Shown: positions 13,074 to 31,926 of the stretch, one piece after another
Layout: every line of letters starts with the position of its first letter
Numbering within the stretch: the first letter of the stretch is position 1
Virus record (IMG/VR): IMGVR_UViG_3300020172_006270
Span: 62,001 to 126,000 of that record
Strand: one strand, 5' to 3'
Length of the DNA: 64,000 nt
The notes under the pieces: generated by a model
Database searches by the model: none
Told to the model about the DNA's origin: nothing
Seen by the model: the letters and a program-made list of their open reading frames with translations, nothing else
Made by a program: the position numbers and the translations under genes

Positions 13074-13075
13074 AG

Positions 13076-13159
13076 TGACCTCGGTGGGACTTGAACCCAC
13101 ACGTCCTTTCGGACACAAGTTCCTAAGACTTGAGCGTATGCCAATTTCGCCACGAGGCC
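13076..13159 (-). tRNA. tRNA-Leu(TAG), long variable arm
   Basis: cloverleaf, CAAGT-CTTAGGA-ACTTG, GGTTCAAGTCC, A73. Confidence 0.95.
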
Positions 13160-13203
13160 GTTATTTTGCGCATGAGTTCGCCAAATTTTCGTGTTCGCCA
13201 TAC

Positions 13204-13232
13204 ATTTTACCACGTTTTCGGCATCTTGTAAA
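13204..13232 (-). promoter_or_regulatory. sigma70-type phage promoter
   Basis: TTTACA-17nt-TAAAAT with CGTGG. Confidence 0.7.
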
Positions 13233-13235
13233 ACG

Positions 13236-13317
13236 TAGCCCTGGCGGGACTCGAACCCGCAATCCTTTCGGCGACAGATTTTAAGTCTGTTGTGTATACC
13301 AATTCCACCACAGGGCC
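13236..13317 (-). tRNA. tRNA-Leu(TAA), long variable arm
   Basis: ACAGA-CTTAAAA-TCTGT, GGTTCGAGTCC. Confidence 0.95.
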
Positions 13318-16376: not shown

Positions 16377-16377
16377 T

Positions 16378-17298: not shown

Positions 17299-17316
17299 GA
17301 TTATTTCCTTCTTGGA

Positions 17317-17550
17317 TTATATATCGCCCCGGCGAATGATCCCGGATTTCATCAGCGATGGAACGTCATTGGGATTAAGACCATGTAATTCTTTGTAGTG
17401 CCTTTGCACCAAGTATCTTTCAACACCAATGCTGAAAGGCATCCATTCACCAAGTTCAGCGGACAGTTTGGTGATTTCCGCTTCTTTGTTTTTGTCCCGA
17501 TAGTGCAGGGGAAGGCCACAAGCACAGCGTTTGACTTGATTTCTACTCAT
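17317..17550 (-). CDS. hypothetical protein
   Basis: MSRNQVKRCACGLPLHY. Confidence 0.6.
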   Translation of the reverse strand: MSRNQVKRCACGLPLHYRDKNKEAEITKLSAELGEWMPFSIGVERYLVQRHYKELHGLNPNDVPSLMKSGIIRRGDI

Positions 17551-17914
17551 CGAACTGCCCTTTTGGAATTGGTCCATATTGTCTTGCCATGCACGCTCTG
17601 AGGTATCGTCTTGTAAGACGTTCAAGGCTTGGCAAATACATGGTGATGAAAGCCTGTCGCAGTTCGCTGATTTCTTTTTTGCCGGGGTTGAAGCCTTTGG
17701 GTCGAAGGTATCCTGATATGCTCACGCCTGTTGGCCGGTGTATCAGAAATACCGCTCGCAACTTTTTGTGTTTTTCGTTTTTGTCTGACCGGACGCAGAC
17801 TTCTCCTGGTCGTATTTTGAATTTTCCAAAAGAATAATCCGACACGCATCTTTGAAGCACGCTGTTGTCAATGTGCATTGATTCTCGAACTTGCGTGGCG
17901 TTAGGTTTTCGCAT
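17543..17914 (-). CDS. hypothetical protein
   Basis: overlap-coupled ORF; AVFLIHRPTGVSI weakly recalls the RF-1 domain but has no GGQ. Confidence 0.55.
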   Translation of the reverse strand: MRKPNATQVRESMHIDNSVLQRCVSDYSFGKFKIRPGEVCVRSDKNEKHKKLRAVFLIHRPTGVSISGYLRPKGFNPGKKEISELRQAFITMYLPSLERLTRRYLRACMARQYGPIPKGQFDE

Positions 17915-18086
17915 TGGCTTTTTGTTTCCAACAGACTGCGTGGTAAATGGCAGGCAATCCATCTATCGCTATGATTTCTGGATCGAGGACATATTTGCGG
18001 TTGATCTTGAGTGCATGGCCGCACTTACGACATTGCCGATTCTTATGCTTGCAATTTTTCGTGACTTTGTATTCGGGTCGCATCAT
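17901..18086 (-). CDS. hypothetical Cys-rich small protein
   Basis: CRKCG...YHAVC. Confidence 0.55.
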   Translation of the reverse strand: MMRPEYKVTKNCKHKNRQCRKCGHALKINRKYVLDPEIIAIDGLPAIYHAVCWKQKANAKT

Positions 18087-18361
18087 CGTTCCTCGATGTC
18101 GGTTCCCCAAAAACCAAATCGGAACCAGAAGGTCTTGCCGTCTTCGACTTGGACTTTATAGATGCGACAATTTTTGCTATGCCAGAACGGTCCAATATCG
18201 AAATGGTGTCGATCTATGCTGGAAACAACATGCTTGTTCGTCGCAGCCCAGGTATTTATTTCCTTTCGGTCGCTGGATTCCTGCGCAGGCAGAATTATGA
18301 GTGCCAATAGCAAAAACACAACAACGACGACAGCCAAAATCTTCTTTTCCATGATCTCCAT
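18083..18361 (-). CDS. hypothetical membrane-anchored protein
   Basis: N-terminal hydrophobic helix. Confidence 0.65.
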   Translation of the reverse strand: MEIMEKKILAVVVVVFLLLALIILPAQESSDRKEINTWAATNKHVVSSIDRHHFDIGPFWHSKNCRIYKVQVEDGKTFWFRFGFWGTDIEER

Positions 18362-18371
18362 CCATAAACGA

Positions 18372-18400
18372 CAAAAGCGTGGTGATTATACCACGCTTTT
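18372..18400 (-). terminator. terminator after tuf, overlapping a CGTGGTATAAT -10 element
   Basis: AAAAGCGTGGT-GATTAT-ACCACGCTTTT inverted repeat. Confidence 0.65.
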
Positions 18401-18408
18401 GCGTTTCT

Positions 18409-19581
18409 TTACAGCAGTTCCGTCACGACGCCTGAGCCAATCGTCATACCGCCCTCTCGGATAGCGAAATGACTGCCTTTTTCAATGGCAATCGGCTTAT
18501 CCAGGGTGATAAACAGGCAAGTGTTCTCGCCCGGCATAACCAATTCGATTCCTTCCGGCATTTCAACAAGGCCGGTGACGTTAGTGGTTCGGAAGAAGAA
18601 CTGCGGCTTATAACCGTTGAAGATCGGGGTGTGACGCCCGCCCTCATCCTTGCCCAAGACGTAAATTTCACTCTTGAACTTGGTGTGAGGTTTGATACTT
18701 CGTGGTTGTGCCACAACCTGTCCACGCTCCACCTGATCGGCTTTGATGCCTCTCAGCAGCAACCCGACGTTCTGACCAGCTTCGCCAAATTCCAATTGCT
18801 TGTTGAAGGCTTCGACGCTGGTGACAACCGATTCCAGAATGTCTCCCAGGCCCAAGATTTCAACTTTGGTTCCGACCGTGACGGTTCCTTGCTCGATCTT
18901 GCCCGTGACTACACAGCCACGACCTTCGATGTTGTGAACGCCCTCGATAGGCATCAAGAAAGGACGGTCAATAGAACGGCTGGGGTCAGGGATATAAGAA
19001 TCCAGAGCCGCCATCAGTTCTACGATGCACTTGCTTGCTGCGGGATCGGCAGGGTTATCCAGAGCGGGCTTTGCGGCCCCACGGATAAAGGGAGTCTTCT
19101 CACCATCGAAGCCATACTTCGTCAGCAAGTCTCTCGTTTCCATCTCGACCAGTTCGAGCAATTCCTTATCCTGAACCAGATCACACTTATTGAGGAACAC
19201 GACAATATCCGGCACGCCCACCTGACGAGCGAGCAGAATATGCTCTTTCGTCTGAGGCATAGGACCGTCTGCTGCATTGACGAGCAATACAGCGCCGTCC
19301 ATTTGAGCGGCCCCGGTAATCATGTTCTTCACATAGTCGGCGTGACCAGGGCAGTCGATGTGAGCATAGTGACGGGTATCCGTCTCATACTCAACGTGCG
19401 ACGTGGTGATCGTTACCGTTTTGGTAACGTCACGAACGGTGCCGCCCTTGGCGATGTCGCCGTATGCTTTCTTTTTTGCGAAACCCTTTTCGGCCTGAAC
19501 AGCGAGAATAGCTGCGGTCAGGGTCGTCTTCCCGTGGTCAATGTGACCAATCGTTCCGACATTGATGTGGACTTTCTTCAC
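18409..19581 (-). CDS. tuf: elongation factor Tu
   Basis: [54 protein letters not shown]; GTG start after AGGAG. Confidence 0.98.
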
Positions 19582-19705
19582 TTTACTTTCTCCTGTGATC
19601 TTTACGATAGATCACTGTTGGAGGTTTTGATCTCTATATCCCCACTACAGAATAGTGTTTCTACTCACAACGAGTAAGAGCCAAGGCATCCAGAAATCGA
19701 AACAG

Positions 19706-19789
19706 TGCCGCTCCCCGGACTTGAACCGGGACGCCGGTAAAGGCATCAGATTTTGAGTCTGACGTGTCTGCCAATTCCACCAGAGCGGC
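19706..19789 (-). tRNA. tRNA-Leu(CAA), long variable arm
   Basis: TCAGA-CTCAAAA-TCTGA. Confidence 0.95.
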
Positions 19790-19802
19790 ATAAACAAAAC
19801 AG

Positions 19803-19877
19803 TGACGGGTGTGGGACTCGAACCCACAAAACCATGATTTTAAGTCACGGATGTCTGCCTAGTTGCATCAACCCGCC
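19803..19877 (-). tRNA. tRNA-Leu(TAA), short variable loop
   Basis: CGTGA-CTTAAAA-TCATG, variable region GTTTT. Confidence 0.88.
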
Positions 19878-19883
19878 ATACAG

Positions 19884-19960
19884 TGCCAGCGGTGGGACTC
19901 GAACCCACAAAACCCCGGCTCTCGACCGGAGATGTCTACCATAGGTTGCATCACGCTGGC
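19884..19960 (-). tRNA. tRNA-Leu(GAG), short variable loop, C33
   Basis: TCCGG-TCGAGAG-CCGGG, variable region GTTTT. Confidence 0.82.
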
Positions 19961-19992
19961 ATATAGTGCCGGATCGCTCCAGCACTAATCTC

Positions 19993-20295
19993 TTAATCCT
20001 CACCACGCAACTCTTTGAGTTGTTCGTTGTAGTCCACGTCAGACTTCAATTCGTGATTGTGCTTTGACCGCTTTGGATACTTGTCGCTATGACAGATGCC
20101 GCACTGCGGATTGCCACAATCGAAAGCGTCTTTCTTACGGAATCGACCCTTCTGTTCATCACATTCACAGTCAACAACATATGCGCTGACGCCAATGCGA
20201 TTTCTTGTCCAGGTTTTGTTGCTCTCAACGTGAGAGCGCCGGTGTTTCTTCCACTCACGCAGAGTGATCTTGTAATCCTCGTGCCACCGCTTCAT
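19993..20295 (-). CDS. small basic Cys-containing hypothetical protein
   Basis: RBS GGAGG; CGNPQCGICH. Confidence 0.75.
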   Translation of the reverse strand: MKRWHEDYKITLREWKKHRRSHVESNKTWTRNRIGVSAYVVDCECDEQKGRFRKKDAFDCGNPQCGICHSDKYPKRSKHNHELKSDVDYNEQLKELRGED

Positions 20296-20376
20296 CGTTC
20301 CCTCCATAATGGGTTTGGGTAATAGGCTCGATGAAGCCGATGATTTGCGTGTGGTGAGTGTTCATGTTTATTCTCT

Positions 20377-20829
20377 CTAGTTAAGGAAGCAACAGTCCGG
20401 GTTGGGACACCAATCTCCGAACTCTTCGGATTGGGTGTCAGAAATCAATCGTGTGTAACAGCAACGGCAATGTCCTTTGACCCACCATGCTGGGCCGAAC
20501 CATCGAAAGCCGCCACGAGTTGTTTCGTAGTAGCATCCAATTCGTTCTAGCCAATCCATAATAGTGTGGGCGATCATTCGCCGTTCAGCATCACGCCATG
20601 AGTAAGGAAATTCATGCCACTCATAGCCATGACCACTTTCTCGGTATTGATGATCTCGACCGAGATACTTCCATGATTTTTGCTTGCGAACAAACTGATC
20701 GTCCCATGCCGTGGGAAGGTTTCGTCTCTTCCCACGGACATAGGGATCATTGCGGTCTTGGTTCGCTCTTATTTCTTGTGTTGTTCTCGGATACCGAAGG
20801 CACGTCGAGAACCATCTTTTCTTTGCCAT
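20377..20829 (-). CDS. basic hypothetical protein
   Basis: RBS AGGAG; RYPRTTQE..RGKRRNLPTAWDD; C-terminal Cys cluster. Confidence 0.75.
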   Translation of the reverse strand: MAKKRWFSTCLRYPRTTQEIRANQDRNDPYVRGKRRNLPTAWDDQFVRKQKSWKYLGRDHQYRESGHGYEWHEFPYSWRDAERRMIAHTIMDWLERIGCYYETTRGGFRWFGPAWWVKGHCRCCYTRLISDTQSEEFGDWCPNPDCCFLN

Positions 20830-20858
20830 GTAGCGTTTCTCCTAAGTGCGGAATGCAC

Positions 20859-20894
20859 TTAAAAGACGCTACCCAGCCTTTCGTGAATTTTCAT
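20859..20894 (-). CDS. putative 11-aa leader peptide MKIHERLGSVF
   Basis: AGGA RBS; stop codon lies in a hairpin that sequesters the RBS of the 20829 gene. Confidence 0.5.
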   Translation of the reverse strand: MKIHERLGSVF

Positions 20895-21028
20895 ACGAGT
20901 CCTTTTACTTTGTTCTTTCAAATATGTGGACTGTCGAATCCTTGACAGTTTTACTTACCGATCATAGGCGATCCTATCGCTACCGGGGTCAGCCTCATGT
21001 TCATCCTGAACATCAGCGTCCACTTCCA

Positions 21029-21541
21029 TCAACCCGTCCAAATTTCTTCTTTTCCAGTCGGCGGGTCATTCAATCTCTTCAAAAATTTACCTGTATATTT
21101 ATGGTCTTCGGGGTTCAAACCCTTCCGCAAATACCGCACATCTGGTGTTACTTCTCGTTCCGAATACTGATATTCAATGCCCAGCCGAGTGTGTTTGATG
21201 ATTTTCTTTTCTTTATCCACCCATTCGTATTCACGAGCCTGATCGACAACTACAGTGCCTTTCATGCCTTCGATGTCGATGTCATATTCGTGCATGTTCT
21301 GGATTTCAATTTCGTCTTCTTCAACCAACGCCCAACAAGGATAGCTGTACCGTTTAGGCGGTGGGTTTTCATGGATCGGTCCACCCATCAACATTCGTCG
21401 CAAGAGAGCCGAGTGGCCAACATCAGCCGAACTTGAACCTCGTTTATTGTCTTCGCAGATATTCATCCACTGGCAAACCATCTTGCAAGCGAACTCACAC
21501 TGCTCACGAGTCAACGATGTAACTTTTTCTTCGTCCATCAT
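21029..21541 (-). CDS. hypothetical protein
   Basis: RBS GGAG; lies between tRNA blocks. Confidence 0.75.
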   Translation of the reverse strand: MMDEEKVTSLTREQCEFACKMVCQWMNICEDNKRGSSSADVGHSALLRRMLMGGPIHENPPPKRYSYPCWALVEEDEIEIQNMHEYDIDIEGMKGTVVVDQAREYEWVDKEKKIIKHTRLGIEYQYSEREVTPDVRYLRKGLNPEDHKYTGKFLKRLNDPPTGKEEIWTG

Positions 21542-21555
21542 ATTCTCCAACAAAG

Positions 21556-21632
21556 TACCCAGGACGGGACTCGAACCCGTAAAACCGATATTTTGAGTAT
21601 CGGATGTCTACCGAAGGTTGCATCACCTGGGC
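21556..21632 (-). tRNA. tRNA-Leu(CAA), short variable loop
   Basis: CGATA-CTCAAAA-TATCG, variable region GTTTT. Confidence 0.88.
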
Positions 21633-21669
21633 ATATTCTACCAAATCTCGTCTTGGCTGTACAGCCAAG

Positions 21670-21757
21670 TGGACAGCGACGGAATCGAACCGCTCCGGCA
21701 CCCACCCTACTTTTTTAATGCCAACGGATTTACAGTCCGCCGTAAGGAACGCTATCC
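21670..21757 (-). tRNA. tRNA-Tyr(GTA)-like, no D-arm, enlarged variable arm
   Basis: acceptor GGATAGC/GCTGTCC-A, GCGGA-CTGTAAA-TCCGT, GGTTCGATTCC. Confidence 0.78.
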
Positions 21758-21814
21758 ATGTTTTCCTAAAAACAGGTGTTTTCCCACATAGGAAAACATG
21801 CGTTTTTAGGAAAG

Positions 21815-21888
21815 TCGCTCCGGTGGGACTCGAACCCACAGCATCCCTGGTTCTAAGCCAAGGTGGTCTGCCAATTGCCTACAGAGCG
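21815..21888 (-). tRNA. tRNA-Leu(TAG), short variable loop
   Basis: CTTGG-CTTAGAA-CCAGG, variable region GATGC. Confidence 0.88.
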
Positions 21889-21894
21889 TTCAAG

Positions 21895-21966
21895 TGGACT
21901 GTGAGGCGCTCGAATCCTCGTCTCAGCGTTTTCAGCGCTGCGCTACACCATCTCAGCTAACAGTCC
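21895..21966 (-). tRNA. tRNA-Phe(GAA), atypical T-arm
   Basis: CAGCG-CTGAAAA-CGCTG. Confidence 0.82.
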
Positions 21967-21974
21967 ATATACAG

Positions 21975-22058
21975 TGTCCGAGGGGAGAGTCGAACTCCCA
22001 CGCCTTTTACGGCACAAGGCCCTCAACCTTGCGTGTCTACCAATTTCACCACTCGGAC
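21975..22058 (-). tRNA. tRNA-Leu(GAG), long variable arm
   Basis: CAAGG-TTGAGGG-CCTTG. Confidence 0.95.
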
Positions 22059-22070
22059 AAAACAAATCAG

Positions 22071-22145
22071 TGGGCTGTCTCAGAGTCGAACTGAGTTCTC
22101 ATGTTCTTCAGACATGCGCTGAATGACCGCACTAGCTCACAGCCC
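22071..22145 (-). tRNA. tRNA-Phe(GAA)
   Basis: CATGT-CTGAAGA-ACATG. Confidence 0.88.
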
Positions 22146-22154
22146 AATATTCAA

Positions 22155-22334
22155 TTATTCTTTTGTTGCTTCTTCAAGTTCCCTGATGCAATCTCGCAAT
22201 GATATTGTTCGTCCATGCTGGACGCCCATTGCAGTCAATGGGTTCATATCTTTTGCGACATTAGGATTCTCTTGAAATCGCTTCAATCGTTCTTTCCATT
22301 TTTGAATCAATTCTTGTATATTTGTTTCTTGCAT
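22155..22334 (-). CDS. hypothetical small protein
   Basis: RBS AAGGA, MQETNIQELI. Confidence 0.65.
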   Translation of the reverse strand: MQETNIQELIQKWKERLKRFQENPNVAKDMNPLTAMGVQHGRTISLRDCIRELEEATKE

Positions 22335-22350
22335 ATTTAATCCTTCCAAG

Positions 22351-22434
22351 TCTCCGGGGGGAGAGTCGAACTCCCACGCCTTTTACGGCACAAGATTCTG
22401 AGTCTTGCGTGTCTACCAATTCCACCACCCGGAG
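22351..22434 (-). tRNA. tRNA-Leu(CAG), long variable arm
   Basis: CAAGA-CTCAGAA-TCTTG. Confidence 0.95.
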
Positions 22435-22441
22435 ATAAAAG

Positions 22442-22530
22442 CGGAAGTCAAGGGAATTGAACCCTTACCGGATATTTCACCGGGCCTGTTTTCAAGACAG
22501 GTGCAACAAACCAATATTTGCCTAACTTCC
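22442..22530 (-). tRNA. tRNA-Ser(TGA)
   Basis: CCTGT-CTTGAAA-ACAGG, long arm, G73. Confidence 0.92.
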
Positions 22531-22555
22531 ATATTGTGTCAACAACTTTGACATA

Positions 22556-22627
22556 GAGGATACACCGGCTTCGACACCGGATATGTCCCGTTTCTAGCAG
22601 GATGAGTTACATTTCTCCATGTACTCC
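22556..22627 (-). tRNA. degenerate tRNA-like element, anticodon AGA (Ser)
   Basis: GGAGTACA/TGTATCC bulged acceptor, GAG/CTC D-stem, TCCTG-CTAGAAA-CGGGA, aberrant T-loop. Confidence 0.5.
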
Positions 22628-22646
22628 ATATCGCATTTGACACAAG

Positions 22647-22733
22647 CGGAAGCCAAGGGAATTGAACCCTCACCGGGATTAACCGGGCCTGTTTTCGAGA
22701 CAGGTGCAACAAACCAGTATTTGCCTAGCTTCC
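22647..22733 (-). tRNA. tRNA-Ser(CGA)
   Basis: CCTGT-CTCGAAA-ACAGG. Confidence 0.92.
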
Positions 22734-22746
22734 ATAAAACAACAAG

Positions 22747-22836
22747 CGGAGGACAAGGGAATCGAACCCTCACCGGGTATTTCACCGGATCGGTTTAGCA
22801 AACCGACGTAGCAACACCACCATCTACCTATCCTCC
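22747..22836 (-). tRNA. tRNA-Ser(GCT)
   Basis: TCGGT-TTGCTAA-ACCGA. Confidence 0.92.
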
Positions 22837-22842
22837 ATTCAG

Positions 22843-22931
22843 CGGAAGCCAAGGGAATTGAACCCTCACCGGATATTTCACCGGACCCGCTTTCCAGGCG
22901 AGCGCAACAAACCAGTATTTGCCTAGCTTCC
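22843..22931 (-). tRNA. tRNA-Ser(GGA)
   Basis: CTCGC-CTGGAAA-GCGGG. Confidence 0.92.
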
Positions 22932-22987
22932 GTGTAATGCACTATACTTTGAACATTAACCAGGGCTAATGTTCATTCTATCGTACA

Positions 22988-23287
22988 TTATGCTTCAACC
23001 TTCACCAACTTGCCAAAGATACAGTTCCGGCCAACCCAGCCATTGATATGGCCTTTGTTGTTGCCGATCTGGAATCGGTCGCCTTGTATTGCTTTGATTA
23101 AGTGCAGGTATTGTTTGCCTGCAACTTTGCACAATACAATGTCGCCCGTATCCAAAACGCCAGTCACCGGCTCGACAGTGCATAACTGTCCTGATTCGAT
23201 CTTCCCGACCATTGAGTTGCCTCGTGGTCGAAACGAAACCGTCTCACCTGTTTGGAGTTTCGCTATGTAACCAGTCGCCCATCCCAT
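22988..23287 (-). CDS. S24/S26 peptidase-like protein
   Basis: RPRGNSM, GDIVLC, YLHLIK. Confidence 0.75.
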   Translation of the reverse strand: MGWATGYIAKLQTGETVSFRPRGNSMVGKIESGQLCTVEPVTGVLDTGDIVLCKVAGKQYLHLIKAIQGDRFQIGNNKGHINGWVGRNCIFGKLVKVEA

Positions 23288-23301
23288 AGTAATTCTCCAA
23301 G

Positions 23302-23385
23302 TGCATCCGGCAGGAATCGAACCTGCATGTCCCGAAGGAGGCTGGGTTACAGCCAGCTAGACCCACCACACTGTCTAACGGATGC
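23302..23385 (-). tRNA. tRNA-Tyr(GTA)
   Basis: GCTGG-CTGTAAC-CCAGC, long arm, atypical D-arm. Confidence 0.9.
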
Positions 23386-23395
23386 GTATGCCAAT

Positions 23396-23448
23396 AAAAA
23401 AACCCCCGGCAACTTTTTCCATCTTCTGGAGAAAGCTGCCGGGGGTTT
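23396..23448 (-). terminator. attenuator terminator directly upstream of the tRNA array
   Basis: CCCCCGGCAGC...GUUGCCGGGGG followed by U7. Confidence 0.9.
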
Positions 23449-23471
23449 GTATTTCCCCACAATTGTCCCGT

Positions 23472-23555
23472 TTAAGTCAGGACGCAGCCTTCCCCGTCGC
23501 TAAACAAATATAGCGATGAGTAAGAGAGCGACAGACTGAGGGATAAAGTGTTCAC
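23472..23555 (-). CDS. leader peptide MNTLSLSLSLSYSSLYLFSDGEGCVLT
   Basis: GGAG-N8-GTG; codons 4-19 are all Leu/Ser/Tyr/Phe; overlaps the protector and antiterminator segments. Confidence 0.85.
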   Translation of the reverse strand: MNTLSLSLSLSYSSLYLFSDGEGCVLT

Positions 23556-23611
23556 GATGAAAACTCCAATTGTGCGTGCCAATTAAAGGCACATTTATTG
23601 TGTTGTTTCTT

Positions 23612-23640
23612 ATAGTAGTTGTGTCGAAACAAAATTTCAA
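23612..23640 (-). promoter_or_regulatory. sigma70 promoter of the leader/tRNA/tuf operon
   Basis: TTGAAA-17nt-TACTAT. Confidence 0.8.
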
Positions 23641-23841
23641 GACGGAATCCGAAATTTTTCTCAACTCGCAGGCGGGTGGTCTGATTACGGCACAGACAAC
23701 CCATAGAAGCCGACGCTTGCTTATGCTTTGGTGCAAAACATTAAAACCCGGTCGTTAGGTTGACTCCCACCCTCGTCTGATAATGAGGCAAGCCTCACAC
23801 GCTCAGACTTACAAGAAGCGTTGTCCGATCAGGACGCAGGT

Positions 23842-24634: not shown

Positions 24635-24763
24635 TCTCTCCTCTCTTTCTCGTCAATTTACTTTTATGTGTATCAAGTTTGCTTTATAGACGACTCTTTA
24701 ACGAGTCGTCTATTTTTTTATCTTGTCTTGATTGAATGCACTGGTTTATGCACAATACGCCCC

Positions 24764-25045
24764 ATGAAAACCAGTATCGTACACTGTGTTCGTGATGAGT
24801 ACGACGTTTATATCGGGCGACCTTCAATCTGGGGCAATCCTTTCAGTCACAAGCCAAGTTGCTTGGCCGAGATAAAAGTTGCAACCCGCTATGAAGCCAT
24901 CGACAAATATCGGGAATGGATAAAGACCCAACCGGATTTGATGGCTGCTCTTGAAGACCTGCGTGGCAAACGTCTGGGCTGCTGGTGTCGGCCTAAACTC
25001 TGTCATGGTGATGTCCTACTCGAACTGCTTGGAGAATCGGCATGA
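24764..25045 (+). CDS. DUF4326-like protein
   Basis: YDVYIGRPSIWGNPF, LRGKRLGCWCRP..CHGDVL. Confidence 0.88.
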   Translation: MKTSIVHCVRDEYDVYIGRPSIWGNPFSHKPSCLAEIKVATRYEAIDKYREWIKTQPDLMAALEDLRGKRLGCWCRPKLCHGDVLLELLGESA

Positions 25046-26100
25046 GCGATGAAGTCTTGATCTTTAGTGACATTCACATTCACCCGCACAAGCGGAGCAA
25101 TGACCGATTAGAGCATTGCCTGAAGGCACTCGATTGGGTATTCGATGTTGCTGAACAACGGGGTATCACTCAAATCTTATTCGGCGGCGACCTATATCAC
25201 GACCGCCAAAAGATCGAGGTTTATACCTACCAGAGAACATTTGAAACTCTGGAGAAGCGTCTTCGTGGCGGCAAATTCAAACTATATTTGCTGCTGGGAA
25301 ATCACGACCTGTGGTATAACGATAAAACCTCGGTCAGTAGCGTGATCCCATTGTCGGCCTTGCCCGGCGTGCAGATTATATCGCAGCCTGAACGACTCAA
25401 TATCGCTGGATCGAATTGGGACTTTATCCCATTCACTCACAATCCGATAACCACTCTGGAAGAACTCAAGAAAAAGTCGGGCAACCCAGAATACGCTCTG
25501 GGACATATTGCCATCGACGGTGCCATTCTTCATGGCACTCAATATTCTGATGTTGCGATTGAACACGACGGCGACATGGTGAGTGTTGGCGTTAGCTTAT
25601 TCGATCACTATAAGCACACCTTCCTTGGTCACTATCACGCCGAACAGAGGGTCAATGAGAAGGTTGAATATGTTGGATCGCCATTGGAACTATCCTTTGG
25701 CGAAGCCTTCCAGAAAAAGCACATTATCGCTTTCAATGGCAAGACTGGCAAAAGGACGTATATCCCGAACGATTTCAGTCCGGTCCATTTGGTCATTGGC
25801 ATCAAGGATAAAGACAAATACGATCTGACCAATAATTTCGTTCGTATTAAAGTGGATGACATCGGAGCAACCGATTTGGTTGCCATGCGTAAAGAGATGC
25901 TGGAATCCAACAATATGGGCAGCTTGGAAATCAAGCAGCAAAAAAAGATATTGGACCAGCATGTAATCCAAGACGCCAAAGCTATCTTATACACGGGCGA
26001 TGAAATGCTCGCCAAGTATGTTGATGAGATTGGTCCCAAGAATCTTGACCGAGATGAACTTCTCCGTATCGGTCGCAAAATATGTCAAAAAGTGGAATGA
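25042..26100 (+). CDS. gp47/SbcD-like recombination nuclease subunit
   Basis: FSDIH, GGDLY, LGNHD, GHYH, YVGSP. Confidence 0.92.
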   Translation: MSDEVLIFSDIHIHPHKRSNDRLEHCLKALDWVFDVAEQRGITQILFGGDLYHDRQKIEVYTYQRTFETLEKRLRGGKFKLYLLLGNHDLWYNDKTSVSSVIPLSALPGVQIISQPERLNIAGSNWDFIPFTHNPITTLEELKKKSGNPEYALGHIAIDGAILHGTQYSDVAIEHDGDMVSVGVSLFDHYKHTFLGHYHAEQRVNEKVEYVGSPLELSFGEAFQKKHIIAFNGKTGKRTYIPNDFSPVHLVIGIKDKDKYDLTNNFVRIKVDDIGATDLVAMRKEMLESNNMGSLEIKQQKKILDQHVIQDAKAILYTGDEMLAKYVDEIGPKNLDRDELLRIGRKICQKVE

Positions 26101-27409: not shown

Positions 27410-29458
27410 ATGAGAAACCTAACCTTCAAACACATTGCAGCTTGGAATTTCTTGCCCTTCGGTCCCGAAGGCATTCAGTTCCCGTTAAATAAATATGGGA
27501 ACATCATTTTGATTCGTGGAGAGAATCGAGATGCCAGGGCAATTGAGAATCAATTGCCTGATGGACAATCTGAAGAATGCAAGACGAGCAGTAATGGTTC
27601 TGGCAAAAGCTCGCTTCAAGAAATCATTGTTTACGGTCTGTTTGGCAAGACCGTAAAACAAAAATTAGGTGTCAACGATGTCGTTCATAATATTGAACGC
27701 AAAGACTGCAAGATCGAACTTATCTTTGGTGATTATCGCATCATCAGAACACGTTCTGAAGGTGGCGTTAAAACAAAAAACAGCCTGAGACTGTGGGAAA
27801 GTGCCGATGGCATTTGGGACAAAACCACAGAGATCACTCAAGGCACAATGCCGACCACTCAGAAGCAGATCGAAAGCATCATTGGCTTGTCCTATGATGC
27901 CTTTGTGAATATGTGCATATTCACGGACGATCAACGCTTGTGCTTCTTGGAGTGCGATAATCCCCACAAGAAAGAGATCGTAGAAAATCTGCTTTCATTG
28001 GGTGAATATCGAGAGTGGCATGAGAACGCCAAAGAGTTGCGTAAGGCCATCAAGCAGAATATCGACTCGAAGGCCAAAGAATATAACTTGCTATTGTCCA
28101 ACAAGGATGATGCGAATCGTCGTCTTTTGTTGACTGAGAAAAAGCATACTGATTGGCAACTCGCAAAGACGACGGAGATTGCTACACTTGAGAAGTCGAT
28201 CCTGACAAAGAAGCAAGCTCTTGCATCTACAGACAACGGAGCGGCACTTCTGGCCTATCAAGAGGCTCAGGCCAAGATTACCTCAATCAATGATGCCTTG
28301 CCTCCTTTGGAGGTTTCTAAGGCTGACTTTGAGAAGAAGCTCCAATTGGTAAAGGAAAAGGAAGCCGAGATTAAAGTCGAGGCCCAAGAACTCACCAAGC
28401 AATTCGGAGAGTTCTCCACGACTGCCAAAACCAAGTTGGCCGACCGCAAAAAGAAAGAAGCTGAGATTGCTGACTTGGAAAGCAATACGCCCGGCACCCG
28501 TTGCAATAAGTGCCGAAGTGTTGTTGAAGAGGAAAATATCGTTGAATATGTTAATGGTCTGAAATTAGAGATCAACGACATCAATCTTGATATTCAAACT
28601 GCTATGACTGGCGGTAAAGATGTCGCTGCCAAAACCGAAGAACTGAAGCGGCGACAAGACAAAGCTGCGACGATGGTAAAGGCCGTCGAAGCGAAAATTG
28701 CTTCTATCGACAATGAGCTTAGATCATTGCGAAACGATTTGGTCATCGCATCTAAAGTGCGTGAGCCAAAGGCTGACAGTTCTGAAGCTCTCCTGGAACA
28801 AGAGATTGCTCAGATCAAGAATTCAGTCGAAAGTAAGAAGACTGAATTAGCGGGTCGTTCGCCATATCAGGATATTATCGACAACGATAAAGTCGAACTT
28901 GATAGGGTTACGCTTAATGTGGCCGATAAAGAACTTGAGGTAAAAACCCTCGAAACAGAATTGCCATATCTTGATTATTGGATTGCCGGGTTCGGAGAGC
29001 AGGGCATTCGCAAATGGGTTGTGGAAGGCATTATTCCAGAACTCAATACTCGCATCAATTATTGGCTTCAGTTCCTTATCGACAATAAGATCACTCTGAA
29101 ATTCGATAATGAGTTGAACGAAAAAATTGAGCGTAATCCTGTGGATGGTGATCCGTATGTATATCACGCCATGTCCACGGGCCAACGGCGTCGGCTTAAT
29201 CTCGCCGTGAGCCAATCGTTCGCACACGTCATGACCATTAGCTCCGGGTCCATTCCGTCTATTGTGTTTCTTGATGAAGTAAGCACCAACGTCGATCCTC
29301 TGGGCGTCCAGGGCATTTACAATATGATCTGTGAATTGGCCGAGGATAAACAAGTATTTGTAACCACTCACGACCCAGACCTCCTTCGTATGCTCGAAGG
29401 AGCAGACGTTATTAAGCTGGTTCACGAGAATGGGTATACAAAATTGGTTCAAGAATGA
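27410..29458 (+). CDS. gp46/SbcC/Rad50-like ATPase
   Basis: NGSGKSS, Zn-hook CNKC, MSTGQ signature, FLDE, TTH. Confidence 0.95.
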   Translation: MRNLTFKHIAAWNFLPFGPEGIQFPLNKYGNIILIRGENRDARAIENQLPDGQSEECKTSSNGSGKSSLQEIIVYGLFGKTVKQKLGVNDVVHNIERKDCKIELIFGDYRIIRTRSEGGVKTKNSLRLWESADGIWDKTTEITQGTMPTTQKQIESIIGLSYDAFVNMCIFTDDQRLCFLECDNPHKKEIVENLLSLGEYREWHENAKELRKAIKQNIDSKAKEYNLLLSNKDDANRRLLLTEKKHTDWQLAKTTEIATLEKSILTKKQALASTDNGAALLAYQEAQAKITSINDALPPLEVSKADFEKKLQLVKEKEAEIKVEAQELTKQFGEFSTTAKTKLADRKKKEAEIADLESNTPGTRCNKCRSVVEEENIVEYVNGLKLEINDINLDIQTAMTGGKDVAAKTEELKRRQDKAATMVKAVEAKIASIDNELRSLRNDLVIASKVREPKADSSEALLEQEIAQIKNSVESKKTELAGRSPYQDIIDNDKVELDRVTLNVADKELEVKTLETELPYLDYWIAGFGEQGIRKWVVEGIIPELNTRINYWLQFLIDNKITLKFDNELNEKIERNPVDGDPYVYHAMSTGQRRRLNLAVSQSFAHVMTISSGSIPSIVFLDEVSTNVDPLGVQGIYNMICELAEDKQVFVTTHDPDLLRMLEGADVIKLVHENGYTKLVQE

Positions 29459-29499
29459 AGTTCATGCCATACTTGAAGCCAGTCAATTCGGTAGCTCTT

Positions 29500-29538
29500 G
29501 CAAGACATAAGTTACATTTAGAATAACTTATGTCTTGC
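29500..29538. repeat. perfect 15-bp inverted repeat
   Basis: GCAAGACATAAGTTA-N9-TAACTTATGTCTTGC. Confidence 0.8.
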
Positions 29539-29667
29539 CTTAAAAGACCCTAAAAGCTATTATTGTGACCCCCGACAATAATAGTCAAAAATTTCGTCTC
29601 ATAACGACTAGCTACCTTCCCAGCAAACAAGACCAACCAAGAATTTGGAAGAAGGAAAGAGGAAAAA

Positions 29668-31926
29668 ATGTCTATAAAGGCTTTACAGGAATACACTTAC
29701 GTCAGCAGATATGCTCGATTTAACGAAAAAGAAAAACGAAGAGAGACATGGAACGAAGCGGTCGAGCGAGTGATGCAGATGCACATTCGCAAGTTCCCGC
29801 ATATGGCTGAAGTGATTAAATCAGCATTTGAAAAAGTTGAGCATAAATTAGTTTTAGGCTCACAAAGAGCGCTCCAATTTGGCGGCAAGCCAATTGAACA
29901 AAAAAATGCCCGCATGTACAACTGCTGCGTGTCATTCTGTGACAGAGTTCGGTTCTTCCAGGAAACATTCTGGCTTCTATTGTGCGGTTGCGGCACAGGT
30001 TTTTCTGTGCAACATCATCATATTGCGAAACTGCCTGATTTCCACGAAAGCCGTACAAATGGACAGGCTCACAAAAAGCGAAAGCATATCATTCCCGACT
30101 CAATCGAGGGCTGGTCTGATGCTTTGGGCATTTTGTTGGCAACATACATGCCTCACGAAGAATTTTCAGAATGGTATGGTTGCGATGTAACATTTGACTT
30201 TTCAGAAATTCGACCAGCCGGTGCTGTATTGGCATCTGGCGTTGGTAAGGCCCCAGGGCCAGAGCCACTGCGACGTTCACTAGAGATTATTCGTAAGCTC
30301 CTGGATGATCGCTGCCAACACTTCAATCGTCTGCGGTCTATTGACGCATACGATATTGTCATGCACGCCAGCGATGCTGTGTTGAGTGGTGGCGTGCGTC
30401 GTTCAGCTACCATCTGCTTGTTCTCGGCAGACGACATGGAAATGCGTAAAGCCAAGACTGGTAATTGGTTTACGGACAATCCTCAACGTGCAAGGTCCAA
30501 CAACTCTATGTTGCTCATTCGTGGTGAAACCACCAAAGAGCAATTTGAAGAGGCAATGAAGGACGTAAAAGAATTCGGCGAGCCTGGATTCGTATTCGCT
30601 GACCATCGTGATTTTCTTGTCAACCCATGTGTTGAAATCGGCATGTGGCCGGTTCACTGGAAGACTGGTGTTTCTGGTTGGCAAATGTGCAATCTTTGCG
30701 AAATCAATGGTCGCAAGATTAAGACTAAAGAAGATTTTGCCATTGCCGCCAAAGCTGCTGCTATTATTGGAACGCTTCAGGCTTCATATACAAACTTTGA
30801 ATATCTTGGTCAAACATCCAAGGAGATTGTCGAACGAGAAGCGTTGTTGGGCGTCAGCATTACGGGCATGATGGATAATCCTGATATTATCTTCGATGAG
30901 AAGACTCAGCAGGAAATGGCAAAGCTCATTCTGGATACGAACGAGTGGATGGCCAAGCAGATCGGCATCAATCCAGCCGCTCGTGCAACATGCGTAAAGC
31001 CAGCCGGTACGACTAGCTGCATTCTTGGTAGCGCCAGTGGCATTCACCCGCATCACGCCAAGCGATATTTCCGTCGTATTCAGGGCAACTATATGGAAGC
31101 CCCGCTGCAATACTTCAAGGAACGCAATGGCATTGCTGTTGAAAAGTCTGTATGGAGTGCCAACAAGACCGACGAGGTTATTACGTTCTGCGTCGAAGTT
31201 CCCGATGGAGCGAAGACCAAGAATCAGTTGTCTGCATTGAAGCTCCTGGAACACGTTAAGAGTACACAGGCAAATTGGGTCATGGCTGGAACACGTCCTG
31301 AGCTTTGCACCCAGCCTTGGCTTACTCACAACGTCTCCAATACGATCAACGTGCGTCTCGACGAATGGGAAGGCATCACAGATTACATCTACGACAATAG
31401 GAATTTCTTTGCAGGCATTGCATTGCTTCCTCAGTCGGGCGACCTGGATTATCCCCAGGCTCCAATGTGTACGGTACACACCGCCCGTGAAATTGTTCAG
31501 ATGTATGGCGAAGGCAGCTTGTTCGCCAGCGGACTTATTGTCGATGGCCTGCGTGCCTTTGATGATAATCTATGGGCAGCGTGCGTAACCGTTCTTGGTC
31601 ATGGCGAGCCTTTGGTTGAACCCAAAATGCCCGAATCGCCACGCTTGCCTGAAAACTATGAAGAGTGGAGCCAATGGGAAGCTCTGCATTGTGTTTGGGA
31701 GGCGAAGAAGGATTTTGTCCGTCGTGCCGTTCAATTCGCCAACCGATATTTTGAAGGCGATGCTCGACATATGACGCATTGTCTCAAGGAAGTTCACAAT
31801 TGGAAGCTCTGGCAAGATTTGAACAGAGAATATAAAGATGTGGATTATTCGACGATGATCGAGGAAACCGACGAAACTAAGCCGATGGACACGATTGCGT
31901 GTGCCGGTGGAGCTTGTGCAATCTGA
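29668..31926 (+). CDS. nrdJ: ribonucleotide reductase large subunit, class II (NrdJ-like)
   Basis: YNCC, GVRRSA, NPCVEI, CNLCE, TCVKPAGT, C-terminal ACAGGAC. Confidence 0.88.
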   Translation: MSIKALQEYTYVSRYARFNEKEKRRETWNEAVERVMQMHIRKFPHMAEVIKSAFEKVEHKLVLGSQRALQFGGKPIEQKNARMYNCCVSFCDRVRFFQETFWLLLCGCGTGFSVQHHHIAKLPDFHESRTNGQAHKKRKHIIPDSIEGWSDALGILLATYMPHEEFSEWYGCDVTFDFSEIRPAGAVLASGVGKAPGPEPLRRSLEIIRKLLDDRCQHFNRLRSIDAYDIVMHASDAVLSGGVRRSATICLFSADDMEMRKAKTGNWFTDNPQRARSNNSMLLIRGETTKEQFEEAMKDVKEFGEPGFVFADHRDFLVNPCVEIGMWPVHWKTGVSGWQMCNLCEINGRKIKTKEDFAIAAKAAAIIGTLQASYTNFEYLGQTSKEIVEREALLGVSITGMMDNPDIIFDEKTQQEMAKLILDTNEWMAKQIGINPAARATCVKPAGTTSCILGSASGIHPHHAKRYFRRIQGNYMEAPLQYFKERNGIAVEKSVWSANKTDEVITFCVEVPDGAKTKNQLSALKLLEHVKSTQANWVMAGTRPELCTQPWLTHNVSNTINVRLDEWEGITDYIYDNRNFFAGIALLPQSGDLDYPQAPMCTVHTAREIVQMYGEGSLFASGLIVDGLRAFDDNLWAACVTVLGHGEPLVEPKMPESPRLPENYEEWSQWEALHCVWEAKKDFVRRAVQFANRYFEGDARHMTHCLKEVHNWKLWQDLNREYKDVDYSTMIEETDETKPMDTIACAGGACAI

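What the first reader, a model, noticed from the sequence alone, without database searches (positions are those of the whole stretch)
23396..23640. Leader-peptide attenuator that appears to sense Leu/Ser/Tyr/Phe tRNA supply and gate a matching tRNA array plus EF-Tu
Seen on the minus strand: promoter TTGAAA-17-TACTAT (23640-23612), RBS GGAG, then GTG AAC ACT TTA TCC CTC AGT CTG TCG CTC TCT TAC TCA TCG CTA TAT TTG TTT AGC ... TAA (23555-23472). Sixteen consecutive codons are Leu/Ser/Tyr/Phe. They sample all 6 Ser codons, 5 of 6 Leu codons, both Tyr codons and one Phe codon. The 16 downstream tRNAs have only these four identities. Three mutually exclusive helices are present: a protector CUGUCGCU/AGCGACGG (23534-27/23501-494), a 12-bp antiterminator GGGGAAGGCUGC/GCAGCUUUCUCC (23495-84/23439-28), and a GC-rich terminator plus U7 ending about 10 nt before the first tRNA. 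Established: this is the trp/his-type attenuator geometry. Inference: ribosome stalling when any of these isoacceptors is depleted, for example by an anti-phage tRNase, switches on replacement tRNAs and EF-Tu. That would be an inducible counter-defence in which the sensor lists the codons the operon rescues. I know of no described phage example.
Basis: partly seen in the sequence, partly recalled or inferred. Interest (0 to 1): 0.95.

Follow-up and report, generated by a model that had tools for sequence, protein, structure and literature searches.

The report
Leader-peptide attenuator gating phage tRNA genes
A jumbo phage places a short, translated "test strip" of leucine, serine, tyrosine and phenylalanine codons plus a switchable terminator in front of its own Leu/Ser/Tyr/Phe tRNA genes, so the tRNA genes are probably switched on when those codons are read slowly; relatives have it too, and no such control of tRNA genes was found in the literature.

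Summary
On the minus strand there is a sigma-70-type promoter, a GGAG site, and a GTG ORF (23555-23472). Sixteen consecutive codons are Leu/Ser/Tyr/Phe (LSYF); chance expects about 7e-5 such runs in the window. A -35 kcal/mol terminator with U7 ends 10 nt before tRNA-Tyr. At least 17 tRNA or tRNA-like genes lie downstream, all LSYF, plus EF-Tu.

Thirteen distinct homologous leaders were found in related jumbo/huge-phage contigs (EF-Tu identity down to 68%).
- All keep the promoter and the frame-specific LSYF run; 12 of 13 keep a canonical start codon.
- All keep a strong terminator; 13 of its 14 pairs show compensatory changes.
- All keep a long hairpin pairing the run with "region 2".
- Region 2 can alternatively pair with the terminator's 5' arm. 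This is significant against shuffles in 8 of 13.

This is classic trp/his/ilv-type attenuation, applied to tRNA genes. The leaders sample 9-11 of the 11 LSYF anticodon classes; the window's leader samples 11 of 11 and its array carries all 11.

Not shown:
- translation of the ORF or a response to tRNA supply;
- co-transcription of EF-Tu;
- any link to anti-phage tRNases.

Some relatives lack tRNA-Ser nearby yet keep Ser codons. A related non-LSYF array has no leader.

Verdict: new variant of a known kind; high interest.

The parts
23612..23640 (-). Sigma-70-type promoter, TTGAAA-17-TACTAT
   Evidence: Consensus scan gives 9 of 12 matches. The same TTGNNN-N15-20-TACYATA motif precedes the leader in 10 of the 11 viral-contig leader loci searched (L012 gave no match). 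It is nearly unique within each locus.
23564..23567 (-). Shine-Dalgarno GGAG, 8 nt before the GTG start
   Evidence: Read from the sequence. Purine-rich sites sit 5-12 nt before the start codon in the leaders inspected.
23472..23555 (-). Leader ORF: 27 codons plus TAA
   Evidence: Translation. Short ORFs of 18-27 codons are conserved in 13 distinct leaders.
23499..23546 (-). Control-codon run: 16 consecutive Leu/Ser/Tyr/Phe codons. Together with the one later CTG, the ORF's LSYF codons comprise 14 of the 16 possible codons and all 11 anticodon classes.
23466..23543 (-). Region 1:2 anti-antiterminator. A long imperfect hairpin pairs the codon run with region 2 and the stop-codon region. Its apex is UCGCUA (23516-23511) with UAGCGA (23502-23497).
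   Evidence: Nascent-RNA folds. MFE is -28.2 against -17.8 for shuffles, z = -3.6, and p <= 0.05 in 13 of 13 homologues. The apex shows a compensatory change in L003, UUGCUA/UAGCAA.
23427..23495 (-). Antiterminator (2:3), a three-way structure. P1 is 23495-23484 with 23439-23428. P2 is 23483-23478 with 23470-23465 and holds the stop codon in its loop. P3 is UGGGG 23459-23455 with CCCCG 23444-23440.
   Evidence: Constrained folds with the ribosome stalled in the run give -35.0 kcal/mol and sequester 17 of 19 nt of the terminator's 5' arm. The structure is lost when the ribosome sits on the stop codon. Against shuffles z = -4.6, p = 0.001. Coordinates.
23396..23445 (-). Intrinsic terminator (3:4): arms 23445-23427 and 23421-23403, then U7 at 23402-23396
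   Evidence: -35.4 kcal/mol. It forms in the MFE of the whole leader, z = -7.4. RNAalifold finds compensatory changes in 13 of 14 stem pairs across 13 leaders.
21556..23385 (-). First tRNA block: Tyr, Ser(GGA), Ser(GCU), Ser(CGA), Ser(UGA), Leu(CAG), Phe, Leu(GAG), Phe, short Leu(UAG), a Tyr-like gene (GUA) and short Leu(CAA). A 99-aa LexA/UmuD-like ORF (22988-23287) lies after tRNA-Tyr.
   Evidence: ARAGORN, Rfam, loops read by eye, Pfam and fold search for the ORF.
19705..19960 (-). Second tRNA block just upstream of EF-Tu: a short Leu-like gene (loop UCGAGAG), short Leu(UAA) and Leu(CAA)
18409..19581 (-). Phage-encoded EF-Tu, followed by a palindromic hairpin at 18372-18401
   Evidence: All three EF-Tu Pfam domains match. 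Hairpin. The order leader, tRNAs, EF-Tu on one strand is conserved in relatives.
13075..13317 (-). Two distal tRNA-Leu genes (UAA, UAG), 5 kb beyond EF-Tu. They are probably outside the attenuated unit.
   Evidence: Methyltransferase and glycosyltransferase ORFs lie between them and EF-Tu.

Best explanation
This is a ribosome-mediated (leader-peptide) transcription attenuator placed in front of a phage tRNA operon.

Proposed sequence of events:
1. Transcription starts at a host-type promoter.
2. A ribosome translates a 27-codon leader whose middle is a run of Leu, Ser, Tyr and Phe codons. The run samples every anticodon class supplied by the downstream array.
3. If those codons are decoded quickly, the ribosome reaches the stop codon and covers region 2. 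The 19-bp terminator with U7 forms, and transcription stops 10 nt before the first tRNA.
4. If any of these codons is decoded slowly because its tRNA is scarce, damaged or uncharged, the ribosome stalls on region 1. The 1:2 hairpin cannot form.
5. Region 2 then pairs with the terminator's 5' arm as a three-way antiterminator. RNA polymerase reads into the tRNA genes and probably on towards EF-Tu.

Because the products are the very tRNAs that read the test codons, the circuit is a negative-feedback homeostat on decoding capacity for these four amino acids.

Shown: the sequence anatomy, its conservation, and the predicted alternative folds.
Inferred: translation of the leader, ribosome stalling, the response to tRNA supply, and the extent of the transcription unit.
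For: Anatomy in the window.

Frame-specific, non-chance LSYF run.

Conservation:
- 13 distinct leaders were found beside LSYF-only tRNA arrays. The contigs are 49-533 kb jumbo/huge-phage contigs, with EF-Tu identity down to 68%.
- Peptide order and length differ between leaders, but composition stays LSYF. Dinucleotide shuffles give P <= 0.0024 in all 13 and 0 of 20000 in 8.
- The promoter motif was found at the leader in 10 of the 11 viral-contig leader loci searched.

The three alternative structures:
- Terminators of -20 to -36 kcal/mol with T runs in all 13, and compensatory changes in 13 of 14 pairs.
- A ribosome modelled in the run gives an antiterminator that sequesters the 5' arm. A ribosome on the stop codon abolishes it.
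- Before region 3 is made, region 2 pairs with the run in 12 of 13 leaders. The 1:2 hairpin beats shuffles in 13 of 13.
- The antiterminator beats shuffles in 8 of 13. Cognate region 2 / terminator pairs outperform non-cognate pairs in 7 of 13, including L010 and L046, whose terminators have unrelated sequences.

Codon sampling and boundaries:
- Leaders cover 9-11 of 11 anticodon classes, above expectation in 13 of 13. Codon diversity is at or above expectation in 13 of 13.
- The leader marks the 5' edge of the array. A tRNA-Val in L008 lies just outside it.

Controls:
- The same terminator sequence in 18 unrelated contigs has no LSYF run upstream.
- No Rfam leader or T-box family matches.
Against: - There is no experimental or transcript evidence for translation, stalling or a 3' end at the U tract.
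- For the window's own sequence (and L003), the equilibrium fold of the untranslated pre-terminator RNA is the antiterminator, not 1:2. Default termination therefore depends on co-transcriptional order.
- Formal covariation of the antiterminator on a MAFFT alignment is weak. In L006, L007, L009, L010 and L046 it is not better than shuffles.
- One metagenomic variant (L103) has GAG in place of the start codon.
- L003/L004 and L035 keep Ser codons but have no tRNA-Ser in the stretch fetched.
- In five lineages the first gene after the terminator is a LexA-like protein, not a tRNA.
- Promoter-like and terminator-like sites inside the array could uncouple distal tRNAs and EF-Tu.
- Part of the run is also constrained by RNA pairing, for example the UCG CUA ... 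AGC GA apex.
Confidence: 0.75

Rival explanations
1. Same switch, but its purpose is inducible counter-defence. A host anti-phage tRNase, or phage-driven loss of host tRNA, depletes the type II tRNAs (Leu, Ser, Tyr) and Phe. The stalled leader then induces replacement, possibly nuclease-resistant, phage tRNAs and EF-Tu.
For: - Leu, Ser and Tyr are exactly the bacterial tRNAs with a long variable arm (established knowledge).
- Defence nucleases that hit such tRNAs are known. Septu/PtuAB and Retron-Eco7 act on tRNA-Tyr, Septu at the variable loop (abstracts of PMC13096335 and PMC12673091). Human SLFN11 cleaves type II tRNAs (reference list of PMC13056530).
- Phage tRNAs can evade such systems (abstract of PMC11555353).
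- These phages also carry tRNA-Leu genes that lack the long arm.
Against: - No tRNase, trigger or host is identified.
- Phe is not a type II tRNA.
- The one bacterial Schlafen read here prefers tRNA-Lys.
- A plain supply homeostat explains the same anatomy.
Confidence: 0.2
2. The leader reports general translation elongation or aminoacylation status, such as amino-acid starvation, EF-Tu inactivation or ribosome shortage, rather than the supply of these particular tRNAs. The LSYF composition is ancestral or structural.
For: - Arrays without tRNA-Ser keep Ser codons in the leader.
- EF-Tu lies downstream on the same strand.
- Part of the run is fixed by pairing.
Against: - Composition is held to four amino acids in one frame only, while order, length and codons drift.
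- Leaders cover more anticodon classes than expected in 13 of 13 cases.
- The element was found only beside LSYF arrays.
Confidence: 0.12
3. The ORF is not translated. The element is a purely RNA-level or factor-dependent terminator/antiterminator, for example bound by a protein or an uncharged tRNA.
For: - L103 lacks a canonical start codon.
- The RNA structures alone are highly significant.
Against: - The Shine-Dalgarno site and an ATG or GTG start are conserved in 12 of 13 leaders.
- Amino-acid restriction is frame-specific and survives dinucleotide shuffling.
- The stop codon lies 10 nt or less after region 2, or inside it, in 11 of the 12 leaders where the fold defines a region 2 (coordinates).
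- No T-box or other Rfam family matches.
Confidence: 0.05
4. The ORF encodes a small functional Leu/Ser-rich peptide, and the hairpin is simply its terminator.
For: Short conserved ORFs followed by terminators are common for small proteins.
Against: - Peptide sequence is not conserved; only composition is.
- The terminator abuts same-strand tRNA genes.
- Mutually exclusive folds are conserved.
Confidence: 0.03

Closest known systems
Multivalent leader-peptide attenuators of enterobacterial ilvGMEDA / ilvBN and thr operons (established knowledge)
   Same: Promoter, short ORF with a run of control codons for several different amino acids, 1:2 / 2:3 / 3:4 alternative helices, and an intrinsic terminator before the first regulated gene.
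   Different: Those control amino-acid biosynthesis enzymes in bacterial chromosomes. This one sits in a phage, controls tRNA genes, and its control codons sample essentially all synonymous codons and anticodon classes of four amino acids. No sequence or Rfam similarity.
pheST (pheM leader) attenuator of E. coli (established knowledge; pheL is discussed in PMC3082878)
   Same: A leader-peptide attenuator that controls a component of the translation apparatus in response to decoding of cognate codons.
   Different: pheM controls a synthetase and senses one amino acid. Here the regulated products are the tRNAs themselves, which gives a direct product-feedback loop.
trp and his operon attenuators
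   Same: Geometry. The control codons lie in region 1. The stop codon is placed so that a terminating ribosome occludes region 2. The terminator is strong and U-rich.
   Different: Those use a single amino acid. Here the antiterminator is a three-way junction with the stop codon in a hairpin loop. In the window's version, equilibrium folding of untranslated RNA favours antitermination.
E. coli thrU-tyrU-glyT-thrT-tufB operon (established knowledge)
   Same: tRNA genes co-transcribed with an EF-Tu gene downstream.
   Different: That operon is under growth-rate and stringent control at the promoter. No leader peptide or attenuator is known for it.
T-box riboswitches
   Same: A transcription terminator/antiterminator switch that reports tRNA status to translation-related genes.
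   Different: T-boxes bind uncharged tRNA directly and have no ORF. No T-box match here, and a translated leader is indicated.
Phage tRNAs as counter-defence, e.g. T5 tRNA-Tyr against Retron-Eco7/PtuAB (abstracts of PMC11555353 and PMC10264068)
   Same: Phage-encoded tRNAs that can replace host tRNAs lost during infection.
   Different: No inducible, codon-sensing control of such tRNAs turned up in the literature searches run here. A defence link for this element is untested.

Membership tests
Ribosome-mediated (leader-peptide) transcription attenuator | Own promoter, ribosome-binding site and short ORF upstream of the regulated genes on the same strand | tested here: met
   The promoter motif was found at the leader in 10 of 11 viral-contig loci searched. 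The short ORF is conserved in 13 leaders. One of them, L103, lacks a canonical start codon.
Ribosome-mediated (leader-peptide) transcription attenuator | Run of regulatory codons, enriched beyond chance and specific to the ORF frame | tested here: met
   16 consecutive LSYF codons. Expectation is about 7e-5 per window. Shuffles give P <= 0.0024 in 13 of 13 leaders, and the other frames give runs of 4 or fewer.
Ribosome-mediated (leader-peptide) transcription attenuator | Intrinsic terminator between the leader and the first regulated gene | tested here: met
   -35.4 kcal/mol hairpin plus U7, ending 10 nt before tRNA-Tyr. 13 of 14 pairs show compensatory changes.
Ribosome-mediated (leader-peptide) transcription attenuator | Antiterminator (2:3) mutually exclusive with the terminator | tested here: met
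   Predicted in all 13 leaders by constrained folding. Significant against shuffles in 8 of 13. Cognate pairing is best in 7 of 13. Alignment-based covariation is weak.
Ribosome-mediated (leader-peptide) transcription attenuator | Anti-antiterminator (1:2) that includes the control codons, so that a stalled ribosome frees region 2 | tested here: met
   12 of 13 and 13 of 13 leaders. For the window itself 1:2 is kinetically plausible but is not the equilibrium fold once region 3 is present.
Ribosome-mediated (leader-peptide) transcription attenuator | Stop codon placed so that a terminating ribosome occludes region 2 | tested here: met
   The stop codon lies 10 nt after region 2 in the window. 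It lies 10 nt or less after region 2, or inside it, in 11 of the 12 leaders where the fold defines a region 2; L006 is 23 nt away and L009 has none defined (coordinates). The modelled ribosome at the stop codon removes the antiterminator.
Ribosome-mediated (leader-peptide) transcription attenuator | Regulated genes functionally tied to the amino acids of the control codons | tested here: met
   The downstream array is only Leu, Ser, Tyr and Phe in the window, and its 11 anticodon classes are all sampled by the leader. Arrays in relatives are also LSYF. Exceptions: one tRNA-Thr in L048 and a CUA-anticodon tRNA in L007, and no tRNA-Ser near L003/L004 or L035.
Ribosome-mediated (leader-peptide) transcription attenuator | Read-through responds to the supply of cognate charged tRNA and needs leader translation | not testable with these tools
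   Needs reporter, Term-seq or Ribo-seq experiments.
T-box riboswitch | Specifier loop and conserved T-box antiterminator motif (Rfam model) | tested here: not met
   No T-box hit at E <= 1 in window 12800-23700.
Described Rfam leader families (Leu, His, Thr, Trp, Phe leaders) | Match to the family covariance model | tested here: not met
   No such hit at gathering score or at E <= 1.
Phage tRNA-based counter-defence | Phage tRNAs replace host tRNAs cleaved by a defence nuclease and resist it | not tested
   The host and any nuclease are unknown. Only circumstantial hints exist: the type II tRNA set, and short-arm tRNA-Leu variants.

The most novel reading that the evidence does not exclude
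The leader is a decoding-capacity sensor of a phage immune-evasion circuit. Suppose a host tRNase, or phage-induced turnover of host tRNA, removes the long-variable-arm tRNAs (Leu, Ser, Tyr) and tRNA-Phe. Ribosomes would stall on the leader, and the phage would induce a complete replacement set: 11 anticodon classes, including variable-arm-less tRNA-Leu, plus its own EF-Tu. It would shut the set off again once decoding recovers. That would be the first inducible, self-limiting tRNA counter-defence, and the first case of tRNA genes regulated by translation of their own cognate codons.
Probability: 0.2. Interest if true: 0.95.

Novelty: new variant of a known kind. Interest (0 to 1): 0.82.

Why it matters
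Leader-peptide attenuation is a textbook mechanism, but it is known for amino-acid biosynthesis and a few synthetase genes in bacteria.

Here the same logic appears to regulate tRNA genes themselves, and probably EF-Tu. The element sits in uncultivated jumbo and huge phages. Its control region samples every anticodon class that the operon supplies.

If confirmed, three things would follow:
- It would show that phages measure the host's decoding capacity in real time and dose their own tRNAs accordingly. That would give a concrete, testable mechanism for the long-debated role of phage tRNA arrays: codon supply, replacement of degraded host tRNA, or counter-defence.
- It would be a compact, portable genetic sensor of isoacceptor availability.
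- It would pose a new question: why are Leu, Ser, Tyr and Phe singled out in this clade?

Tried and rejected
**Searches that found nothing useful**
- Close or distant DNA matches among deposited phages: only generic tRNA similarity.
- A terminator-sequence scan of viral contigs found no new family members. It served only as a negative control.
- A metagenome scan with the LexA-like protein found more than 558 relatives. Only 3 carried a leader, so this protein is not a good marker.

**Leaders matched to other tRNA sets**
- I looked beside L005, L025, L028, L062-L064 and others.
- None was convincing. One Thr/Arg-rich sORF in L005 does not match its array.
- In L005 the promoter abuts the first tRNA directly.
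- The generic low-diversity codon scan was too noisy to use.

**Codon-anticodon co-variation across family members**
- Inconclusive, because loci are truncated and tRNA detection is incomplete.

**Covariation of the antiterminator**
- MAFFT/RNAalifold recovered only the 6-bp core, with weak statistics.
- I relied instead on per-sequence constrained folds, shuffles and a cognate versus non-cognate pairing test.

- It is not in any predicted optimum. A longer 1:2 hairpin replaces it.

**Rejected ideas**
- MiaA-type (UNN-codon) logic is rejected. CUN and AGY isoacceptors are included, while Cys and Trp are absent.
- Origin of the short tRNA-Leu genes from tRNA-Phe is rejected. Their D-arms are Leu-like.

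**Neighbouring genes and literature**
- No aminoacyl-tRNA synthetase or tRNA-repair gene was found in the ORFs scanned.
- Literature searches found no prior description.
- The bacterial Schlafen and DARNA papers gave no matching target set.
Full report
**1. What is in the window**

On the minus strand the described features are all present at the stated coordinates.
- Promoter: TTGAAA (23640-23635), 17-nt spacer, TACTAT (23617-23612).
- GGAG at 23567-23564 and a GTG start at 23555.
- A 27-codon ORF ending in TAA at 23474-23472.
- Codons 4-19 (23546-23499) are all Leu, Ser, Tyr or Phe (LSYF). They use all six Ser codons, five of six Leu codons, both Tyr codons and TTT.
- A hairpin with a 19-nt 5' arm (-35.4 kcal/mol) and U7 (23445-23396) ends 10 nt before tRNA-Tyr at 23385.

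The run is not a chance event.
- From base composition, about 7e-5 runs of 16 or more LSYF codons are expected in the whole window. The only other long run is a simple repeat.
- Dinucleotide-preserving shuffles of the ORF never reach 16 (0 of 20000). The other two frames of the same bases give runs of 3 or fewer.

**2. What lies downstream**

- ARAGORN finds 14 tRNAs, all on the minus strand and all Leu, Ser, Tyr or Phe.
- Rfam adds three more: 19884-19960, 21670-21758 and 21556-21632.
- By eye these are a short Leu-like gene with an irregular loop, a Tyr-like gene (GUA) and a short Leu(CAA). The count is therefore at least 17, not 16.
- The array carries all 11 anticodon classes needed to read the 16 LSYF codons. 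The leader samples all 11.
- EF-Tu is confirmed at 18409-19581.
- The window belongs to a 223-kb IMG/VR contig. It encodes a tail sheath, a baseplate hub, Mre11/Rad50-like proteins, a class II ribonucleotide reductase and a CTP synthase. This is a jumbo myovirus-like phage with no close deposited relative.

**3. Comparative test**

Searches with the EF-Tu and with the 99-aa ORF that follows tRNA-Tyr recovered related jumbo and huge phage contigs of 49-533 kb.

Every EF-Tu relative flanked by an LSYF-only tRNA array has a run of LSYF codons on the same strand, just upstream of the array. This holds down to 68% EF-Tu identity. In all, 13 distinct leaders were collected.

Features they share:
- the TTGNNN-N15-20-TACYATA promoter motif, found at the leader in 10 of the 11 viral-contig leader loci searched and almost unique within each locus;
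- a purine-rich ribosome-binding site;
- an ATG or GTG start, except L103, which has GAG;
- an 18-27 codon ORF;
- a terminator of -20 to -36 kcal/mol with a T run.

Peptide order, length and codons differ between leaders. The composition stays LSYF in one frame only, with shuffle P <= 0.0024 in all 13.

The same terminator sequence in 18 unrelated viral contigs is not preceded by such a run.

**4. Alternative structures**

| Modelled state | Predicted structure |
|---|---|
| Ribosome stalled in the run | Three-way antiterminator. P1 pairs the ORF's 3' end with the inner 5' arm of the terminator. P2 is a hairpin with the stop codon in its loop. P3 pairs GGGG with the outer CCCC. |
| Ribosome on the stop codon | Antiterminator lost |
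| RNA made before region 3 exists | In 12 of 13 leaders, region 2 is paired with the codon run in a long imperfect hairpin |

- The long 1:2 hairpin is more stable than shuffles in 13 of 13 leaders, z = -1.8 to -7.6.
- The terminator stem shows compensatory changes in 13 of 14 pairs.
- The antiterminator beats shuffles in 8 of 13.
- In 7 of 13, a leader's own region 2 pairs better with its own terminator than any region 2 from another group. These include L010 and L046, whose terminators are unrelated in sequence.
- Alignment-based covariation of the antiterminator is weak, because MAFFT cannot align the divergent members.

So all three helices of a trp-type attenuator are present.

Its apex, UCGCUA/UAGCGA in the window, is conserved and shows compensatory change: UUGCUA/UAGCAA in L003.

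One caveat applies to the window and L003. The equilibrium fold of untranslated RNA, once region 3 is present, is the antiterminator. Default termination would therefore rest on the order of folding.

**5. Mechanism**

The best explanation is ribosome-mediated attenuation of a tRNA operon.
- Fast decoding of the LSYF run takes the ribosome to the stop codon. It then covers region 2 and the terminator forms.
- Slow decoding of any sampled codon stalls the ribosome on region 1. Region 2 is freed, the antiterminator forms, and polymerase reads into the tRNA genes.
- Because the products decode the test codons, the loop is self-limiting.
- Leaders cover 9-11 of the 11 anticodon classes, above expectation from phage codon usage in 13 of 13. 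Codon diversity is at or above expectation in 13 of 13. This fits a sensor of all isoacceptors.

Translation, stalling, the response to tRNA supply and the reach of the transcript are all inferred.

**6.

- Control of EF-Tu rests on conserved same-strand order (leader, tRNAs, EF-Tu) at distances of 1.1-7.4 kb. Promoter-like and terminator-like sites occur inside the window's array.
- The idea that the sensor lists what the operon supplies holds for the window and most relatives, but not strictly. L003/L004 and L035 have no tRNA-Ser in the fetched stretch yet keep Ser codons.
- L048 has one tRNA-Thr and L007 has a CUA-anticodon tRNA within the array.
- In five lineages the first gene after the terminator is the LexA-like protein.
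- A related phage (L005, EF-Tu 74% identical) has an array without any LSYF tRNA next to its EF-Tu. The same promoter type abuts the first tRNA there, with no leader. The attenuator is thus specific to LSYF arrays in the data at hand.
- Nothing here bears on an anti-phage tRNase. Leu, Ser and Tyr are the long-variable-arm tRNAs of bacteria, and defence nucleases that hit tRNA-Tyr or type II tRNAs are known. Phe does not fit, however, and no nuclease or host is identified.

**7. Comparison with what is known**

- It works like the multivalent ilv and thr attenuators and like the pheST (pheM) attenuator.
- It meets every sequence-level defining feature of the leader-peptide attenuator class that could be tested.
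- It matches no Rfam leader or T-box family.
- Full-text searches found no description of a leader peptide or attenuator in front of tRNA genes or phage tRNA arrays.
- I therefore rate it a new variant of a known kind: a known mechanism with a new class of regulated genes, a new host (phage) and a new all-isoacceptor control run.

**8. Verdict**

- The attenuator interpretation is supported.
- The counter-defence purpose and the EF-Tu gating remain open.
- Confidence in the mechanism is 0.75; interest is 0.82.

Noticed in passing
window 19802-19877, 21814-21888, 21556-21632, 19884-19960 (minus strand); also L006, L009, L012: A parallel set of short (74-77 nt) tRNA-Leu genes lacks the long variable arm but has Leu-like D-arms. 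They sit beside normal 82-88 nt tRNA-Leu genes with the same anticodons. Bacterial tRNA-Leu is normally type II, so the charging and purpose of these variants are open. One of them (19884-19960) has an irregular anticodon loop, UCGAGAG.
   Followed up: partly
window 21556-21632 and 21670-21758 (minus strand): ARAGORN and the whole-window Rfam run both missed two tRNA-like genes. One is a short Leu(CAA) scoring 40.1 bits, seen only when a small region was searched. The other is a Tyr-like gene (loop CUGUAAA) with an odd D-arm, scoring below the tRNA-Sec cut-off.
   Followed up: partly
window 22988-23287 (minus strand); L007, L008, L035, L046, L048, L091: A 99-aa stand-alone LexA/UmuD'-like (peptidase S24 fold) protein has an invariant Ser-Met but no invariant Lys. 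The model has pLDDT 92.9 and its best PDB matches are LexA C-domains. In five lineages it is the first gene after the attenuator. It has more than 558 relatives in metagenomes, mostly without a leader or tRNAs nearby. Its role in a tRNA operon is unexplained.
   Followed up: partly
L007:9218-9308: A 91-nt tRNA with anticodon CUA (ARAGORN labels it 'Pyl') lies inside the Leu/Ser/Tyr/Phe array of a 533-kb phage contig. It may be an amber suppressor derived from a type II tRNA, and so a hint of stop-codon recoding.
   Followed up: no
L005:6380-6445 and the whole locus: A phage with 74%-identical EF-Tu has 27 tRNAs around it and none for Leu, Ser, Tyr or Phe. The set complements the array studied here. 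The same promoter type directly abuts the first tRNA, with no leader. These phages appear to sort their tRNA genes into amino-acid-specific blocks.
   Followed up: partly
L103:426-593: This metagenomic variant of the L048-type leader has GAG where relatives have GTG or ATG. All structures are intact. It could be a decayed copy, a sequencing error or a non-canonical start (an in-frame ATC lies just upstream).
   Followed up: no
L003/L004 6796-10000; L035 2200-10000: Close (96-97% EF-Tu) and more distant relatives lack tRNA-Ser genes in the array, and L003/L004 also lack the LexA-like ORF. Their leaders keep 7-8 Ser codons. This suggests recent loss of the block or Ser tRNAs encoded elsewhere.
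   Followed up: partly
window 18372-18401: A perfect 13-bp palindromic hairpin immediately follows the EF-Tu stop codon. It is a likely end of the transcription unit, but on the minus strand it has only a weak T tract.
   Followed up: no
window 53463-53504 (minus-strand frame): The window's second-longest LSYF run (14 codons) is a simple TCT/TCG-type repeat with no leader features. It serves as an internal example of how low complexity can mimic such runs.
   Followed up: no
window 8445-9590, 24668-26100, 27410-33702: Auxiliary genes in the window: glutathionylspermidine synthase (E 5e-146), DUF4326, an Mre11-like phosphoesterase, a Rad50/SbcC-like ATPase, a class II ribonucleotide reductase and a CTP synthase.
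   Followed up: no
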